Shown: one piece after another, positions 16,298-23,314 of the stretch | How positions within the stretch are numbered: position 1 is the stretch's first letter | Layout: every line of letters begins with the position of its first letter | Assembly: GCA_965637545.1 (NCBI GenBank) | Contig: OZ281496.1 | Span: forward strand, 26,350,001-26,414,000 | Length of the DNA stretch: 64,000 bases | Reading direction: 5' to 3' | From: Phallusia mammillata | Lineage: Eukaryota | The notes under the pieces: generated by a model | The model's input: the letters and a program-made list of their open reading frames with translations, nothing else | Told to the model about the DNA's origin: nothing | Database searches by the model: none | Position numbers and translations under genes: made by a program

Positions 16298-18699
16298 CTG
16301 GTATAGATGACTGTCTGCTATCGAACATTTGCCCTCCAGTTCCTTATGTAACACGTTACATCCACTCCACTCCTTCCAGTTGCTTTGAAAGTCTTCATCT
16401 GAAACCGCCTCGGACACTATGTTTAGCAAGTTGTATTTTTATCGGTTAACATTGAAGTTTGAAGTTTGCTTAAAATAGTTAAACATTTGCCTTTGATCGC
16501 TGTAATAAAAAATCGATGTTCCTTGCTTCTCTCTTTGTCGTCTTGTTTCAAATCTTTTCCGTTGTAGCTTGCTATTTCCCTGTATCCGGCTAAAAGTACG
16601 TAAGAGATTTAAAACTATGCCTTATCTTCTAAGGCAGATCTAAAAATTGTGTCATTTCTATATTTCTTTGGTCAGGCTAAGCTAAATACAACGGTAAAGT
16701 GTTAAATGTGATTTTGTAACTTACGTGGCGAAACTTGTAGAGTAACGAAAGCATAACTATGGGATTGCTACAATTTGCAATGAAAACCTTTAGGCTTGTA
16801 GTTGTACATGGTTTTCGAATAGGGGTTATTAAGTAGTTGTTTAGAAATTTGCCGGTAGAATATACTTACATGGAAATGCATTAAACTTTCCACCTAGACC
16901 TTCTCTGCTGGCTAATTTTCGCCATTCAACATCCGGTTTTCCAAAACAACACACGTCATTGGAATCAAACACGGCAAAATTGGTAACCGGGTATCTACAA
17001 AAACCGAAAAATGTTTAAAAAAAAGGATTGGACAACCGTAAGGGTTTTGCTTTACCTGTGGGTACAAAAAAGGGGTATGCGGTTGTGCGTATTATCTCGC
17101 TGTCGTGTATGAATCTTTGCATTAAATCTTTACCCCTTGTTTTTTGAAATGTGATATTACTGAATTATCATTGTTCCTGTCGTTTAGATATCGTCCGATT
17201 ACTCGTCCGAACTAGTTCTAAATTTAGAACCAGTTTATACATAGCAAGGTTTGGGATGAAAAAATAACTGTGTGTTATTGTAAACCTTTCTTATGAATGA
17301 AATCTCCTTGCAAGTAAAAGCAAAAGGACTGCGCCGATTCAGGGTCATTGTTTTATGACTGCAGGAAATTTCTTTTCTTTGTACAATAATAAACATATAG
17401 CCACTTAGTTAGTGTTTTCACTTGAAACTTCTTGTCACATGGTTTTTTAGTTTTCTGTCACATTATTAGTATGTCAGTAAAGCTGGGAAGTTGCTTAGAT
17501 CAGCGCTTGATGGGTAGAAACGACTTACACCGCAGAAGGATCGTTTGATCTATGGAGGTAGGTTGCTAGAAAATGCTCCTTTTCTTTTAAGTACACTGCA
17601 GCCACGTCCCACTTCTCAATCAGCATTTTCGTGTCGTCGGTTCGCTCAAAGAAATTAACGATGAAATAACGGCTCTCTAGCGGTGACATAGCCTTCATAC
17701 GAATAAAACAGATTATGTGACTGTTGCATAATCCAACATGGTTTGATTTCGCAAATGCCAACATAGTGTTATGGCAACACAGAAAATGACTATAGCCTTG
17801 ATACGAATAAAACAGATTATGTGCAGAATTTTCGAGTTCATAAATTACATACAATTTACATTCAAAATGTAGAGCTTTAAACATGTACAGAAGCATTTGA
17901 AAATAATTACCATGTTGAATGTCTGTGACTTGCCGATTCGTGTCAAATTTACCGATTCGTGCACCGAGACTTAAAACAAGCCAAGATTTTCTTACGTAAT
18001 ACGACCTATGCCAAAGTGAATCTAAAAAACAATGAAAATTTTATGATGCATTTTGACTACCTATATGGGCTATAAAGCAAAATAGCATATACAACAAAAC
18101 GATAGCTCGATAGATATTAAAACAACTTTTGACAGATGTTACTTGTATCAAACGAACTAAGACAGTCAACGAAACACATTCTTTCTCCTTATGGTTGTGT
18201 GATGTACAATTAAAACTATTATATTTGCCAGTTCACTTTATCATACCATTCCATTGTAGACTAAAAAAATATTTTTTCATTAAAGACTAACATTGTGCAA
18301 AAATCTCGATTGAATACAATTTCAGCACGAAAACGTTACAAGATGCAGCTAACTATGCGTGCTAAGGTACTACAACAACACAAAAACGGTTTCATTCGGT
18401 TTAGGTAACGATCCACATAATTTGAATGAGTGTGTGTTTTACTCACAGCTTAAAATATTTTTTGCACTTGTAACAAAATAGGCGGCAGTTTATAAAACAT
18501 ATACGACAAATCATAAACATGCGAAAGTAGGGTAAGTACCACTTACACAGTTACATTTTATGTTTGAACTATTGTTTTTAAAAAAGCATAAAACCCAATA
18601 GAAAACAAGTTCGCCATAATGAGTAGCGCTACAAATTGATAAAACCCATAAGGTTGTAAAAGCAGCTAAATTAAATATGTGTATTGCGCTACTAGACAT
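16298..18699 (-). CDS. Uncharacterised ABM-like (dimeric alpha/beta barrel-like) protein, paralogue X1; partial model, 3' end unresolved
   Basis: Exons 17692-17529, 16994-16870, 16589-16491, 16416-16298 join in frame: RYFIVNFFERTDDTKMLIEKWDVAAVYLKEKEHFLATYLHRSNDPSAVYPVTNFAVFDS...HRFFITAIKVSEAVSDEDFQSNWKEWSGCNVLH. A putative signal-peptide exon 18699-18547 joins in phase 0 but is less certain. Confidence 0.75.
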
Positions 18700-19043
18700 G
18701 ATCAGTTCGCTCTTGTAATATCACATAACCCTTCGAATGGTTGTCACTTCTTCGCTTTGATGGCAACTTCGACTTGATAGAAGCCGGTAACCGTCTCCAC
18801 GCCCGGAGGAATCCCCGAGCGTGCGTTAAGCTTGTCGGCGATCACGTGACCTTCGGCGTCACTCATTCCGGTGACCTCGGATCGAACAACGTATCGCCAC
18901 AGGGGTGCCATGAAGATGCGCTAAAACGTATATATTTGTGGTTAACATAACCTTTTGGAATCTAGAATGTTTAAAACTTTCTGCTCTTTCACTGTTATTG
19001 GACACATTTTCCCTTGCGCCAAACTTCATACGTTTGTTTTACG

Positions 19044-19204
19044 CAGTGGTGGGATTCAAATTTTCAGCCGGTTCTATCACAAAAGTCATATTTTTTTAGC
19101 CGGTTCTGTTACAAAAAGTCCTTTGACAGTAACCAGTAATGCTAACCGGTTCGCAGATCTCATAAAATTTAGAGCCGGTGCGAACAGGCTGAATCCCACC
19201 AGTG
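19044..19204. mobile_element. hAT-type MITE (161 bp)
   Basis: TIRs CAGTGGTGGGATTCA / TGAATCCCACCAGTG (14/15). Flanking 8-mers GTTTTACG / GTTTTAAG (7/8). Confidence 0.85.
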
Positions 19205-20733: not shown

Positions 20734-20889
20734 TAAGGATACCAGAATTTGTGTTGGCGGACGTCAATGTTTATACTAGCTGGCATGAACTTATTTAATA
20801 ATAGGGCTTTTAATAACCAAGGACATGCGCAACATACTACCTACAGTCCTACACCCACGGACCCTCAACATACTTTTTGCCGACATTAC

Positions 20890-23314
20890 CTTGTATAAAT
20901 GTGTGTCTACTGCAACGTTTCCTGCCATTTTCTGTGAATGCAGAAGATCTGATCCCGACCATTCCTTCCAGTTTGACTCAATGTCTTCATCTTTAATGTT
21001 CTCAGAAGCTGTAGCACAACACGTTAATAGACTTTTTAAGCAAGTTACCAAACTATCACCAAACAAGCTATAGGTACAGTCCAATGTGATAGCAGAATAT
21101 AGGCAGTATGAAACCAACGCTGTTGTCATTCTTATGCGGGTATAGGTAAAAGGGGAAAGTCGACAAACATTGTGATGTAATATCTTGGCAACGTTTAGGG
21201 CAAGCAAGTTTGTGCCACGTATCAGTAAGTGGCAATCGTGCGCAGCAATGGAACTTGTACAACGAATGTAGCAACTGGTGGTTTGTTCGGGGATGCTTAT
21301 ATACAACTGTGTTTGAATTTCTAGTTCATCATTTCGACAAATTTTGGATAGGGAATGACAAATGGATTGTTGCAGCGTCGAAGTTTGCTGTATTGCATCG
21401 GATTGTGATTGTTTGAATGCTACCAATCGTGACATTGGTACATATGCTTTTTGTTTAACTGAAAATATCAACAGTTCAGGTAAAAACAATTTACCGAAAT
21501 GGTCATTTTGAAACAAAATGGAATGGTCTTTTTGAAACGTCTATTGTTTTGTTTTACTGGTTTTACCCTGAGCAGGCATTACATCACTTGCAACTGTTTT
21601 TCCTGCGTTTTGAAATCAGAGAAAGATTTTCTGGACTGATGAGAAATTCTCTGGACTGACGAGTTGATAAAATACCATTAAAAAACTTACAAAACATTCG
21701 CTATTCACCTTTTAAACCAGTGAGAAAAAATCTGTGTGCCCTTGGGCGCTCTTTGTCATCAGTGCACAAATCTTTTTCGTTGTAGCAACCGATCTCATGA
21801 AAAGCAGCTTAAAAAAAGACTATTTACAATTATTGTTACTGACAAACTAAACCTTATGGACATAAAGTGATTACAACGTTTGTAAAAACAGTTGTTTGTT
21901 TGACTTTCAAATTACATTGTAGCCTATATATAGCCTAGCCGAAAAAAACACTATCACTTTAATTCGCCCTACATTCGAAGAAGATTTGAATCATTAGCAT
22001 AGCTTGAAATGTTGCTTAGTTAGTTCAGTCATAAAATACATGCCCATCTTGGATTTGGATTTAACACTGTCACATTTCAATACAATCTCATGCAGTTTGT
22101 TTGCTAGAAAAACTTAGTAGGCTGTTTACACAAACCGTTTACCAGGGGCGGCTTTGTAGTTGTGTTGCATAATTTCCTTCATATAATTCGCCCAAAATTC
22201 ATCCTTCTTCCCGAAGAAACATATGTCGGTTGAATCAGTCAGTGCAAAGTTCACCCAAGGAAATCTGAACAAATACTCTCTGTTGTATTAAGGCCATAAG
22301 CGAAATATAGCGTATAGCTAAAGAATTAAAAACAACGTGAGTATACTAAAGATCGCTTGACGGAAATTGAAATAAAAAAATGTAAACACAAATGGTGGCA
22401 AACAATTTTTAAGCCTAAATATGCCTTTTTGCTTGTTCAAACTGATTTTTTTATCTTCTCTTCTTTTACTACCGTAGCAGGTTTTTAACAGTTTACTTTA
22501 GATATCGCCAGCTCGGAATATTATCTGTTTTCTAACTTTAGGGCCAGTGTTTCAGTGCAAACAATACTACAGGAAACACGTGGTGATAGAGCATTGATAA
22601 GGATTCTATAATATCAAGCAAAAGCGGCCAAACGTTTGCAGAGAGCGAAATCCTGTTTGCCTACTTAGCGAAGCGAAAGATTATCGCTCAGCTATTATGG
22701 CCGTTTTACTCAATAGCAATATTGCTTCCAAGGGTGTGTGTCGCGCAAGTTGATGTATAGGACAGAATTCGAAAAACGCTTTTCACAACTTGTCTCTAGC
22801 ACCATGAAATCCCAAAACTATGATGATTGATTACAATCGGTTTTGAGTTTGACCGAATCAACATAACCCAGCCTTGGGTAAGCTAAGGACTTTATTTTTG
22901 AACCTAAGTAGTCCCTAATTGATTTCAGAAAATACGAATTCGTTTAAAATGTCAACATGAGTTACAAAAAGAAAACAAGACGGAAATTTGCTTAATTTAA
23001 TGCTATAACGAACAATATCTGCGCAACACGCTCAATCAATTGGGAAACCGTTTATCTTTTTTGCGCCATGAATTGCATTTCTTTGACGGATAAGCAGCAG
23101 AATCATTGCGCAAAGATTTGTATGCTTACTTGTTCTTGGGGTCAGTTGAATTGTGAAGATAAGTGGCCAAAAAATGCTCCTGTTTTGCAACGTAGTCGCT
23201 TCCTTTCAGCCAAACCGATTTGAACAGCTCAACGTCTCCGGGGTATTCGAAGTAGTTGAACAAATAGAATCGATTGGAGACAGGCGCCGTTACGGTTGAC
23301 TTACATCGGGTCAT
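20890..23314 (-). CDS. Uncharacterised ABM-like protein, paralogue X2; partial model, 3' end unresolved
   Basis: Exons 23314-23130, 22264-22143, 21807-21709, 21008-20890. Same intron phases as X1 and identical 99- and 119-nt exons. Sequence RFYLFNYFEYPGDVELFKSVWLKGSDYVAKQEHFLATYLHNSTDPKNKFPWVNFALTDS...DEDIESNWKEWSGSDLLH. Confidence 0.78.

What the first reader, a model, noticed from the sequence alone, without database searches (positions are those of the whole stretch)
16298..23314. Tandem pair of uncharacterised ABM-like enzymes in an animal genome
Seen: two paralogues with conserved exon phases and sizes. The N-half pattern (hhhNhF...F...W...a.Yh..qehFL.T.LH.S.DP...f..vNfA) resembles bacterial antibiotic-biosynthesis-monooxygenase (dimeric alpha/beta-barrel) proteins. 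The second half (FFITAIK...DEDFQSNWKEWSG..LH....G...DSHLY) looks like a diverged second barrel, reminiscent of an uncharacterised invertebrate family I recall as DUF7153 (unverified). Established: this fold includes cofactor-free oxygenases, heme-degrading enzymes and polyketide tailoring enzymes. Inference: a fused two-barrel enzyme of unknown small-molecule chemistry, possibly of ancient horizontal origin and now intronised. X1 may be secreted and X2 cytosolic.
Basis: partly seen in the sequence, partly recalled or inferred. Interest (0 to 1): 0.7.

Follow-up and report, generated by a model that had tools for sequence, protein, structure and literature searches.

The report
Two sea-squirt double-ABM (DUF7153) genes
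Two neighbouring, expressed sea-squirt genes encode proteins of the uncharacterised DUF7153 family, which is a fused pair of bacterial-type "antibiotic biosynthesis monooxygenase" half-barrels; its only named animal members found here are sea squirts, so it may be an overlooked bacterial gene transfer, but its chemistry is unknown.

Summary
The gene pair is real. Both genes lie on the minus strand, with five colinear exon pairs (40-57% identity) and identical intron phases (2,1,1,0). X1 runs 15560-17913 (227 aa) and X2 runs 18744-24188 (251 aa). Spliced RNA contigs from three studies confirm every X2 junction and two X1 junctions.

Full-length relatives from Clavelina and Ciona score above Pfam's threshold for DUF7153. 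The N-half is a true ABM domain: PDB 2ril E 2.4e-8, and bacterial ABM profiles E 1e-16. It keeps both pocket asparagines of the cofactor-free oxygenases SnoaB and RslO4 but lacks their tryptophan.

The C-half shows no significant sequence similarity to ABM. It is confidently predicted as a second beta-alpha-beta-beta-alpha-beta unit, so the whole protein resembles two-domain alpha+beta barrel proteins.

"X1 secreted, X2 cytosolic" is not supported. X1 has no signal peptide. X2 has an extra 16-codon exon giving a basic extension without acidic residues, like a mitochondrial presequence.

Horizontal origin is plausible but unproven. The named eukaryotic relatives are all ascidians and the nearest other relatives are bacterial. 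However, the eukaryote clade sits on a very long branch with no supported bacterial sister.

The earlier notes I searched in this scan (by place and by words) did not describe this family.

The parts
17911..18023 (-). X1 leader exon (5' limit uncertain). It ends in the start codon ATG at 17913-17911, followed directly by the donor GTAATT.
   Evidence: RNA contig joint 17911|17692 in all 4 runs. Sequence. There is an in-frame stop 20 codons upstream and no earlier ATG. The Clavelina P0008 gene has the same ATG|GCT split start. In some runs the contigs continue upstream to 18559 or 18920.
17529..17692 (-). X1 exon 1: AMSPLESRYFIVNFFE...YLHRSNDPSA, forming beta1-alpha1-beta2 of the ABM domain. 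It ends in phase 2.
   Evidence: RNA contigs. Translation. The two-sequence profile hits 2ril at E 0.013.
16870..16994 (-). X1 exon 2: YPVTNFAVFD...NAFP, forming beta3-alpha2. It ends in phase 1.
   Evidence: The loose end at 17529 reads into 16994. Matches P0009 at 56% and P0008 at 46%.
16491..16589 (-). X1 exon 3: GYREIASY...RFFITAIK, forming beta4 of domain 1, the linker and beta1 of domain 2. A GC donor is inferred.
   Evidence: Same 99-nt size as X2 exon 3 and exact spacing to the homologues. Not confirmed by RNA.
16298..16416 (-). X1 exon 4: SEAVSDEDFQSNWKEWSG...DSHLYQ. The donor is CAG|GTAAAC.
   Evidence: Pfam DUF7153 at E 4.2e-5, profile positions 86-123. Coordinates.
15560..15733 (-). 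X1 exon 5: RFQTPHPP...ITYKQ plus the stop codon.
   Evidence: Follows the acceptor TTTTAG directly. 44% identical to X2 exon 5. 47-50% identical to P0009 and P0007.
24141..24188 (-). X2 exon 0, coding part: MYSRVLRGMGSAAKQT. It has 16 codons, phase 0 and the donor GTATGT.
   Evidence: The loose end of the RNA contigs at 23321 matches 24142-24171 exactly. Frame and donor shown. The Clavelina P0003 gene has a 16-codon, phase-0 exon 0 as well.
23130..23320 (-). X2 exon 1: IHMTRCKSTVTAPVSNRFYLFNYFE...YLHNSTDPKN.
   Evidence: RNA contigs. The acceptor AG is at 23322-23321.
22143..22264 (-). X2 exon 2: FPWVNFALTD...KAAP.
   Evidence: RNA joints 22264|23130 and 21807|22143 in 4 runs.
21709..21807 (-). 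X2 exon 3: AFHEIGCY...RFFLTGLK.
   Evidence: RNA joints.
20890..21008 (-). X2 exon 4: SENIKDEDIESNWKEWSG...DTHLYK.
   Evidence: RNA joints. Pfam DUF7153 at E 0.004.
18744..18920 (-). X2 exon 5, coding part plus the stop codon. The 3' UTR continues below 18744.
   Evidence: RNA joint 18920|20890 in 4 runs. Translation.

Best explanation
X1 (227 aa) and X2 (251 aa) are two old paralogues of the ascidian DUF7153 family.

Each protein is a single chain of two ferredoxin-like beta-alpha-beta-beta-alpha-beta units. Together these form the alpha+beta barrel that ordinary ABM proteins build as a homodimer.

The N-terminal unit is a genuine ABM domain. It belongs to the bacterial 2ril/SnoaB/RslO4-like subfamily of cofactor-free oxygenases. 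It keeps the beta1 Asn, the alpha1 aromatic residue (Trp), a subfamily-specific His in beta2 and the beta3 Asn. It has lost the Trp four residues after that Asn.

The C-terminal unit has diverged beyond sequence recognition. It lacks these pocket residues and most likely serves as the structural partner that closes the barrel. That would leave one active pocket per chain.

Most likely mechanism (inferred, not shown): the N-domain pocket binds a small aromatic, phenolic or quinol-type molecule and oxidises or isomerises it with O2, without any cofactor.

X1 is probably cytosolic. X2 carries a 33-residue basic N-terminal extension with no acidic residues, which probably acts as a mitochondrial presequence (inferred).

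The two isoform types predate the split between the window's species and Clavelina. The family probably descends from a bacterial ABM gene acquired by an early tunicate and since intronised. This origin is inferred and I put it at about 50-60%.
For: Gene models and expression:
- Spliced contigs from 4 runs in 3 studies support the models.
- Transcript variants comprise 5 synonymous changes and 2 nonsynonymous codons.

Family:
- Every exon aligns colinearly, at 30-64% identity, to the full-length ascidian proteins P0003, P0007, P0008 and P0009.
- Those proteins hit PF23672 at E 1e-13 to 1e-17.

ABM homology of the N-half:
- hmmsearch of family profile A2 against PDB gives 2ril_A at E 2.4e-8 over residues 17-107.
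- hhalign of A3 against bacterial ABM domains gives E 1.2e-16 and 5e-12.
- An exon-1 profile alone retrieves bacterial PF03992 proteins at E 1e-8 to 1e-4 from 1.84 billion representatives.

Fold:
- The AF2 model has pLDDT 79.6 and pTM 0.82, with two beta-alpha-beta-beta-alpha-beta units.
- Foldseek top hits are all two-domain alpha+beta barrel proteins at E about 3e-8: anthrone oxidase-like 5f9p, chlorite dismutase-like proteins and coproheme decarboxylase.
- The C-half modelled alone has pLDDT 81.8. Its matches include OAC, 2ril, At3g17210, SnoaB and RslO4.

Pocket residues:
- The RslO4 and SnoaB pocket residues come from PMC8093152.
- map them to N16, W33 and N65. All three are invariant in the five full-length proteins and present in X1 and X2.

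Isoforms:
- X1 and Clavelina P0008 share a split start codon, ATG|GCT.
- X2 and Clavelina P0003 share a 16-codon, phase-0 exon 0 encoding a basic, acid-free peptide.

Bacterial context:
- Bacterial homologues often sit next to MarR regulators (11 of 60 loci) or cytochrome b561 (6 of 60).
- Some carry lipoprotein or Tat-type signals. This fits cofactor-free redox chemistry on aromatic or quinone compounds.
Against: - No activity, ligand or phenotype is known for any member.
- The Trp at +4 from the beta3 Asn, which orients the substrate in SnoaB, ActVA-Orf6 and RslO4, is replaced by F, T or A.
- X1 has also lost the Trp of FPWVNF that is invariant in the other family members.
- Pfam's ABM model itself does not hit the ascidian proteins at E<=1.
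- The C-half is ABM-like only by predicted fold. hhalign gives E 0.03-0.6, and VIA-align scores unrelated ferredoxin-like domains equally (Z about 8).
- The presequence reading rests on composition only.
- The tree gives no supported bacterial sister, and the eukaryote clade sits on a stem of 3.5 substitutions per site.
- I could not search taxon-labelled animal proteomes with a full-length query.
Confidence: 0.6

Rival explanations
1. The protein is a non-catalytic small-molecule binding or stress protein. In this reading the double barrel only sequesters or carries a hydrophobic or aromatic ligand, or acts as a stable scaffold. Plant Dabb/SP1-type stress proteins and some ABM-fold proteins work this way.
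For: The substrate-orienting Trp of the anthrone oxygenases is lost, and X1 also lost the Trp of FPWVNF. The C-half's best fold matches include the non-enzymatic Dabb/SP1 proteins At3g17210 and 1si9. No redox partner or cluster lies nearby; the neighbours are ShKT-domain genes.
Against: Both pocket asparagines, the alpha1 Trp and the beta2 His are invariant across paralogues that are only 40-50% identical. That pattern is more typical of an active site than of a generic hydrophobic cavity. The closest sequence relatives with known function are enzymes: SnoaB, RslO4 and anthrone oxidases.
Confidence: 0.25
2. The protein is a heme-degrading monooxygenase of the IsdG/MhuD/HmoB type.
For: The bacterial subfamily profile has weak hits to HmoB and MhuD, at E 4e-4 to 1e-3. 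The whole-protein model also resembles heme-binding two-domain barrels such as chlorite dismutase and coproheme decarboxylase. A mitochondrial isoform would sit where heme is made.
Against: This rival rests partly on my own knowledge that IsdG/MhuD enzymes use an Asn-Trp-His triad. Of that triad only the Asn is present. The Trp position is F, T or A, and no His is conserved near beta4. The invariant His lies in beta2 instead. Similarity to chlorite dismutase is at fold level only, with TM about 0.45 and 8-12% identity.
Confidence: 0.06
3. On origin: the family is an ancient, vertically inherited eukaryotic or animal gene that was lost in most lineages, and not a bacterial transfer.
For: The eukaryote clade is separated from all sampled bacteria by a very long branch and has no supported bacterial sister. 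All four or five introns are conserved between distant ascidians. Two deep-branching eukaryote-type sequences, P0009 and P0019, come from unidentified organisms that may not be tunicates. DUF7153's full membership could not be inspected.
Against: In 1.84 billion representative proteins the exon-1 profile found only nine eukaryote-type clusters. Every one that carries a name is an ascidian. All other true hits are bacterial ABM proteins. From my own knowledge, tunicates have well-documented bacterial acquisitions such as CesA and GH6; PMC13390645 discusses these.
Confidence: 0.35

Closest known systems
Pfam DUF7153 (PF23672); predicted ascidian proteins H2Y9C4 (Ciona savignyi) and XP_076820305.1 / XP_076822760.1 (Clavelina lepadiformis)
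   Same: The sequences are colinear over the whole length, and X1 and X2 exons are 30-64% identical to them. The Clavelina genes have the same four internal intron positions. The same two isoform types occur: a split ATG start and a 16-codon presequence exon.
   Different: In the window genome the two isoform genes are adjacent, head to tail. In Clavelina they lie on different scaffolds. The Pfam model starts only at about residue 45, so it straddles the two structural units and hides the ABM relationship.
Bacterial ABM subfamily of PDB 2ril (Shewanella loihica SL3150), including tandem-ABM proteins of Actinomycetota and Calditrichia
   Same: The N-half shares the motif set: L-x-N-x-F-E in beta1, W in alpha1, (F/Y)-x-(S/A)-T-x-L-H-x-S-x-D in beta2, (I/V)-N-x-A in beta3 and P-x-x-Y-x-x-I in beta4. 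Supporting scores are E 2.4e-8 to 2ril and hhalign E 1e-16. Some bacterial members are also two-domain fusions.
   Different: In bacterial tandems both halves are recognisable ABM domains with the N...W pair. In the ascidian proteins only the first half is. The ascidian N-half lies outside the actinobacterial tandem clade, so the fusion may be independent. Many bacterial members are exported, whereas the ascidian ones have no signal peptide.
Cofactor-independent anthrone/quinol oxygenases SnoaB, ActVA-Orf6 and RslO4 (PDB 3kg0, 1n5t, 7bio)
   Same: They share the fold. The two pocket asparagines (SnoaB Asn18 and Asn63; RslO4 Asn7 and Asn52) and an aromatic residue at the RslO4 Tyr22 position are kept as N16, N65 and W33.
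   Different: The Trp (SnoaB Trp67, RslO4 Trp56) is absent. Those enzymes are homodimers of about 110-residue chains inside polyketide gene clusters. This one is a fused pseudo-dimer in an animal with no such cluster.
Single-chain two-domain alpha+beta barrel proteins (anthrone oxidase-like 5f9p, FN1347 3mcs, chlorite dismutase / coproheme decarboxylase)
   Same: They are the best whole-chain structural matches, with Foldseek E 3e-8 to 4e-6 and TM 0.45-0.57.
   Different: Sequence identity is only 7-13%. The heme ligands of the Cld/ChdC family are not evident.

Membership tests
DUF7153 (PF23672) | Score at or above Pfam's gathering threshold (27 bits) against the family HMM | tested here: inconclusive
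   I scanned the window exons one at a time, because the joined model was not built. X1 exon 4 scores 23.9 bits (E 4e-5) and X2 exon 4 scores 17.5 bits; each covers only about 40 of the 170 profile positions. The full-length homologues P0003, P0007, P0008 and P0009 score 50-65 bits.
DUF7153 (PF23672) | Full-length colinear homology to accepted members | tested here: met
   All five exons of X1 and of X2 align end to end to H2Y9C4 (P0007) and to the Clavelina proteins.
ABM (PF03992, antibiotic biosynthesis monooxygenase) | Hit to the Pfam ABM HMM above 23.1 bits | tested here: not met
   No ABM hit at E<=1 for the five full-length eukaryotic proteins. Bacterial relatives score 38-74 bits.
ABM (PF03992, antibiotic biosynthesis monooxygenase) | Significant profile-level homology of the domain to bona fide ABM proteins | tested here: met
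   For the N-half: 2ril_A at E 2.4e-8, and hhalign probabilities of 98.8% (E 1.2e-16) and 97.5% (E 5e-12). The C-half is not significant, at E 0.03-0.6.
ABM (PF03992, antibiotic biosynthesis monooxygenase) | A ferredoxin-like beta-alpha-beta-beta-alpha-beta unit, two of which pair into an alpha+beta barrel | tested here: met
   This rests on a predicted structure, not a solved one: two such units at pTM 0.82. Whole-chain matches are all two-domain barrel proteins.
SnoaB/ActVA-Orf6/RslO4-type cofactor-free oxygenases | Pocket Asn in beta1 and Asn in beta3 | tested here: met
   N16 and N65 (P0008 numbering) are invariant and are present in X1 and X2. The residue roles come from PMC8093152.
SnoaB/ActVA-Orf6/RslO4-type cofactor-free oxygenases | Substrate-orienting Trp four residues after the beta3 Asn | tested here: not met
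   The position is T, A, A, F, F in the five homologues, F in X1 and T in X2.
IsdG/MhuD heme-degrading monooxygenases | Asn-Trp-His catalytic triad (the definition is from my own knowledge of the family) | tested here: not met
   Only the Asn is present. The Trp position is not conserved. The invariant His lies in beta2, not before beta4.
Tunicate SL trans-spliced operon (X2 followed by X1) | One primary transcript across both genes, with the spliced leader added at the acceptor of the downstream gene | tested here: inconclusive
   Single contigs run from X2 through its 3' region into X1 in 2 of 4 runs. In another run the bridging piece has depth 1-6 against 35-42 for the genes. Contigs cannot prove a single molecule. 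No spliced leader was seen at 17692 in the rows shown.

The most novel reading that the evidence does not exclude
DUF7153 is an overlooked bacterium-to-tunicate gene transfer. It was missed by the 2026 Ciona HGT survey because its bacterial similarity lies far below that survey's BLAST cut-off. After transfer the gene was fused or retained as a double ABM, gained introns and duplicated into a cytosolic and a mitochondrial isoform. It now performs a cofactor-free oxygenation in tunicate-specific aromatic, quinone or polyphenol chemistry.
Probability: 0.2. Interest if true: 0.65.

Novelty: new member of a known kind. Interest (0 to 1): 0.42.

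Why it matters
From my own knowledge, ABM-fold enzymes are common in bacteria and very rare in animals.

This work gives a catalogued but blank family, DUF7153, a fold and an ancestry. It is a fused double ABM whose first half is related to cofactor-free anthrone/quinol oxygenases. It also yields concrete residues to mutate: N16, W33, H52 and N65.

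The family appears to have two conserved isoforms, one of which is probably mitochondrial.

If the restriction to tunicates holds, the family adds a candidate to the short list of bacterial genes fixed in the tunicate lineage. The recent genome-wide survey could not have detected it, because that survey required BLAST E<1e-25 (PMC13390645).

The practical payoff is modest until a substrate is found.

Tried and rejected
- Word-index protein searches. Two searches used stop-free reading frames around exon 1 of X1 and exon 4 of X2 and found nothing. A search with the alignment of five homologues returned four of the five input sequences and nothing new. Distribution beyond the exon-1 profile search is therefore untested.
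- Purine nucleoside phosphorylase. X1 exon 5 gave weak PDB sequence hits to DeoD (E 0.006) and to a designed helical repeat. I rejected these because the exon forms beta3-alpha2-beta4 of the second ferredoxin-like unit in the model.
- Other per-exon Pfam hits. DUF5382_N, DUF2712, M157_N_1 and DUF2686 all scored E>0.01, and I treated them as noise.
- Repeat-driven hits. Five of the 21 hits matched only profile positions about 19-44, in 3 to 12 stretches (P0001, P0004, P0011, P0013, P0016). The PDB hits to designed TIM barrels show the same pattern. I set these aside as repeat matches and did not fetch those five sequences.
- Internal duplication. hhalign of the N-half against the C-half is not significant (E 0.18).
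- Inheritance of the fusion from the actinobacterial tandem ABMs. The tree does not support it: a starred branch places the eukaryote clade outside them.
- Rfam. There is no RNA family in 15000-25000 at E<=0.01.
- PolyA signals. There is no canonical AATAAA or ATTAAA downstream of either stop codon, so this says nothing on the operon question.
- Literature. No paper mentions DUF7153. None of the 15 listed results of an ABM-plus-ascidian term search mentions the ABM term.
- Left out by rule. Full-length homologues stood in for them.

Full report
**Observation**

On the minus strand there are two paralogous genes. tblastn of each exon peptide against the whole window finds exactly one partner per exon. 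The matches are in the same order, at 40-57% identity and E 1e-6 to 1e-12, and there is no third copy. Splice sites read from the sequence give the same intron phases in both genes (2,1,1,0). Internal exon sizes are 125/122, 99/99 and 119/119 nt.

It therefore misses a fifth coding exon in each gene. These exons lie at 15733-15560 and 18920-18744. Each starts directly after a TTTTAG acceptor, and they are 44% identical to each other.

**RNA evidence**

Eleven runs that are probably RNA, plus four of unknown kind, hold about a quarter of the sampled words of the stretch, or less. That is roughly the share that is exonic. I laid contigs of four runs from three studies on 17451-23450. Introns are removed at GT..AG boundaries at 18920|20890, 21008|21709, 21807|22143 and 22264|23130. 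This confirms four X2 junctions.

- **X2 upstream exon.** The contigs continue upstream of X2 exon 1 into letters that match 24142-24171 exactly. The canonical reading is that exon 0 ends at 24141 (donor GTATGT) and exon 1 starts at 23320 (acceptor AG at 23322-23321). Exon 0 has an ATG at 24188, three codons after an in-frame stop. It encodes 16 residues in phase 0. X2 is therefore 251 aa.
- **X1 start.** All four runs join 17911 to 17692. The upstream leader exon ends in ATG (17913-17911), followed directly by GTAATT. Exon 1 starts GCT ATG TCA. That ATG is in frame and is the first ATG after a stop 20 codons upstream. X1 therefore starts M|AMSPLES and is 227 aa.
- **X1 junctions.** The E1-E2 junction (17529|16994) is confirmed by a loose end. 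The other three X1 junctions are inferred, including a GC donor after exon 3. That donor gives exactly the spacing seen in the homologues.
- **Variants.** Differences between the transcripts and the window comprise five synonymous changes and two nonsynonymous codons at variable positions.

**Family**

Pfam scans of single exons gave DUF7153 (PF23672) for exon 4 of X1 (E 4e-5) and of X2 (E 0.004).

I ran a profile of the two exon-1 peptides against 1.84 billion representative proteins. It returned only 21 hits at E<=1e-3. The hits fall into three groups:
- Five that matched only profile positions about 19-44, in 3 to 12 stretches. I set these aside as repeat matches without fetching the sequences.
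- Nine eukaryote-type clusters.
- Seven bacterial proteins.

The named eukaryotic hits are all ascidian: two Clavelina lepadiformis proteins and Ciona savignyi H2Y9C4, the latter labelled "DUF7153 domain-containing protein". Four of the five full-length eukaryotic proteins (P0003, P0007, P0008, P0009) score 50-65 bits on PF23672, against a cut-off of 27; P0019 scores 21 bits, below it. The bacterial hits are PF03992 (ABM), several with two ABM domains. One of them, a Calditrichia MAG protein, also touches DUF7153 at E 2e-4. Every X1 and X2 exon aligns colinearly to the full-length ascidian proteins.

**Fold and homology**

N-half:
- The alignment of five full-length proteins (A2) hits PDB 2ril, an ABM protein, at E 2.4e-8 over residues 17-107. 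That is the whole first domain.
- hhalign of the N-halves against bacterial ABM domains gives 98.8% probability (E 1.2e-16) and 97.5% (E 5e-12).

C-half:
- The C-halves are not significantly similar to either bacterial half (E 0.03-0.6) or to the N-halves (E 0.18). The weak alignments are nevertheless in register.

Predicted structure:
- AlphaFold2 on A2 gives pLDDT 79.6 and pTM 0.82, with two consecutive beta-alpha-beta-beta-alpha-beta units. The second unit is the more confident.
- Foldseek matches are two-domain alpha+beta barrel proteins at E 3e-8 and above. They include anthrone oxidase-like 5f9p, chlorite dismutase-like proteins, coproheme decarboxylase, CT0912 and FN1347.
- The C-half modelled alone (pLDDT 81.8) matches olivetolic acid cyclase, 2ril and Dabb/EthD proteins in Foldseek, at E 4e-3 and above.
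- In VIA-align it matches At3g17210, 2ril, RslO4 and SnoaB at Z 7.4-8.0. Unrelated ferredoxin-like domains score the same.

So the "second barrel half" is supported by predicted structure and domain pairing, and not by sequence.

**Active-site comparison**

In SnoaB, Asn18, Asn63 and Trp67 hold the oxidised substrate analogue. In RslO4 the equivalents are Asn7, Asn52 and Trp56, with Tyr22 proposed to stabilise the peroxy intermediate (PMC8093152).

The alignment of the bacterial subfamily to RslO4, chained, gives these equivalences:

| RslO4 / SnoaB residue | Ascidian position (P0008 numbering) | State |
|---|---|---|
| Asn7 / Asn18 (beta1) | N16 | Invariant; present in X1 and X2 |
| Tyr22 (alpha1) | W33 | Invariant; present in X1 and X2 |
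| Asn52 / Asn63 (beta3) | N65 | Invariant; present in X1 and X2 |
| Trp56 / Trp67 | Four residues after N65 | F, T or A |

A His in beta2 (LH-x-S-x-D) is shared with the 2ril subfamily. X1 has also replaced the Trp of FPWVNF that is invariant in the five full-length homologues and kept in X2. The C-half has none of these residues. I infer one pocket per chain, located in the N-domain.

**Isoforms and gene structure across ascidians**

- The Clavelina gene for P0008 has introns at exactly the same four positions. Its start codon is split in the same way as in X1: ATG|GTTAGT ... AG|GCT.
- The Clavelina gene for P0003 also has the four positions, plus a 16-codon, phase-0 exon 0 like that of X2.
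- The X2 extension is 16 + 17 residues with six Lys/Arg and no Asp/Glu. The first 32 residues of P0003 likewise hold only basic charged residues. Both have the composition of mitochondrial presequences. This is an inference only.
- X1 has no N-terminal extension and no hydrophobic leader.
- In Clavelina the two genes lie on different scaffolds. Here they are adjacent.

**Origin**

A scan of one genome per prokaryotic species found 60 loci of the bacterial subfamily. Most are in Actinomycetota. Others are in Chloroflexota, Myxococcota, Calditrichota and Pseudomonadota, including Neisseria, Moraxella and Mannheimia. Ten loci are tandem.

In a domain tree the five eukaryotic N-halves form one clade (100/99) on a stem of 3.5 substitutions per site. 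A starred branch (97/99) places the clade outside the actinobacterial tandem domains. There is no supported bacterial sister; the nearest row, a Hyphomonadaceae protein, joins at 54/52.

The evidence is therefore compatible with an old bacterial transfer into tunicates, but it does not prove one. Two deep eukaryote-type sequences come from unidentified organisms. The 2026 survey of Ciona HGT candidates does not list this family. Its cut-off (E<1e-25) would have excluded it.

**Hints on chemistry from bacteria**

Within 1.5 kb of the bacterial genes, MarR-family regulators occur in 11 of 60 loci and cytochrome b561 in 6 of 60, across phyla. An aldo-keto reductase and a Zn-dependent dehydrogenase flank the Mannheimia gene. 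Some bacterial members carry lipoprotein or Tat-like signals. This fits cofactor-free redox chemistry on aromatic or quinone compounds. It is weak evidence and transfers only loosely to the animal proteins.

**Species**

I did not check this.

**Verdict**

- It is unproven on horizontal origin.
- It is wrong on localisation.
- The genes are new members of a catalogued but uncharacterised family. The added value is the link from DUF7153 to a double ABM, the candidate pocket residues, the two conserved isoform types and the HGT candidacy.

**Limits**

Noticed in passing
window 17911-18920: In 2 of 4 runs a single RNA contig runs from the X2 exons through the whole X2 3' region and then splices (17911|17692) into X1. 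In another run the bridging piece (18024-18551) has contig depth 1-6, against 35-42 for both genes. This means either low-level read-through or operon-like transcription of the pair, or an assembly merge of the X2 3' UTR with the X1 leader exon.
   Followed up: partly
window 19044-19205: A MITE-like element of about 160 bp lies in X2 intron 4. Its terminal inverted repeats read CAGTGGTGGGATTCA ... TGAATCCCACCAGTG. RNA contigs pile up there to a summed depth of about 10,000, with many different flanks, so it is a very abundant, transcribed repeat family.
   Followed up: partly
window 19477-20222: Degenerate direct repeats with units of about 40-80 nt, at 60-95% identity, fill part of X2 intron 4 (repeat families D1-D6).
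   Followed up: no
window 17688-17719 and 17792-17823: The X1 exon-1 acceptor region is duplicated 104 nt upstream, inside the leader intron. The copy is 32 nt long with one mismatch, which changes TATGAAG to TATCAAG. It forms a decoy-like second acceptor.
   Followed up: no
window 24786-25845 and 10230-13750: Genes for secreted ShKT-domain proteins flank the pair on the minus strand. One has a signal peptide at 25845 and Cys-rich domains. The X2 exon 0 begins less than 600 bp downstream of the upstream ShKT gene. I did not test whether these transcripts are linked.
   Followed up: no
window 8345-9130 (+): A long open frame of 261 aa contains fucosyltransferase-like motifs. I only noticed it in the ORF list.
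   Followed up: no
L053:441-1818, L056, L050, L060, L026:776-2713: Bacterial relatives of the ABM domain sit in small conserved clusters with a cytochrome b561 gene, a MarR regulator and an unannotated protein of about 155 aa. That protein is shared by Neisseria, Moraxella and a Hyphomonadaceae MAG.
   Followed up: partly
L004 and L005 (Clavelina lepadiformis): The two Clavelina paralogues are not adjacent. One lies between an arginase gene and a p53-family gene. The other lies between a sodium:solute symporter gene and a Cys-loop receptor gene.
   Followed up: partly
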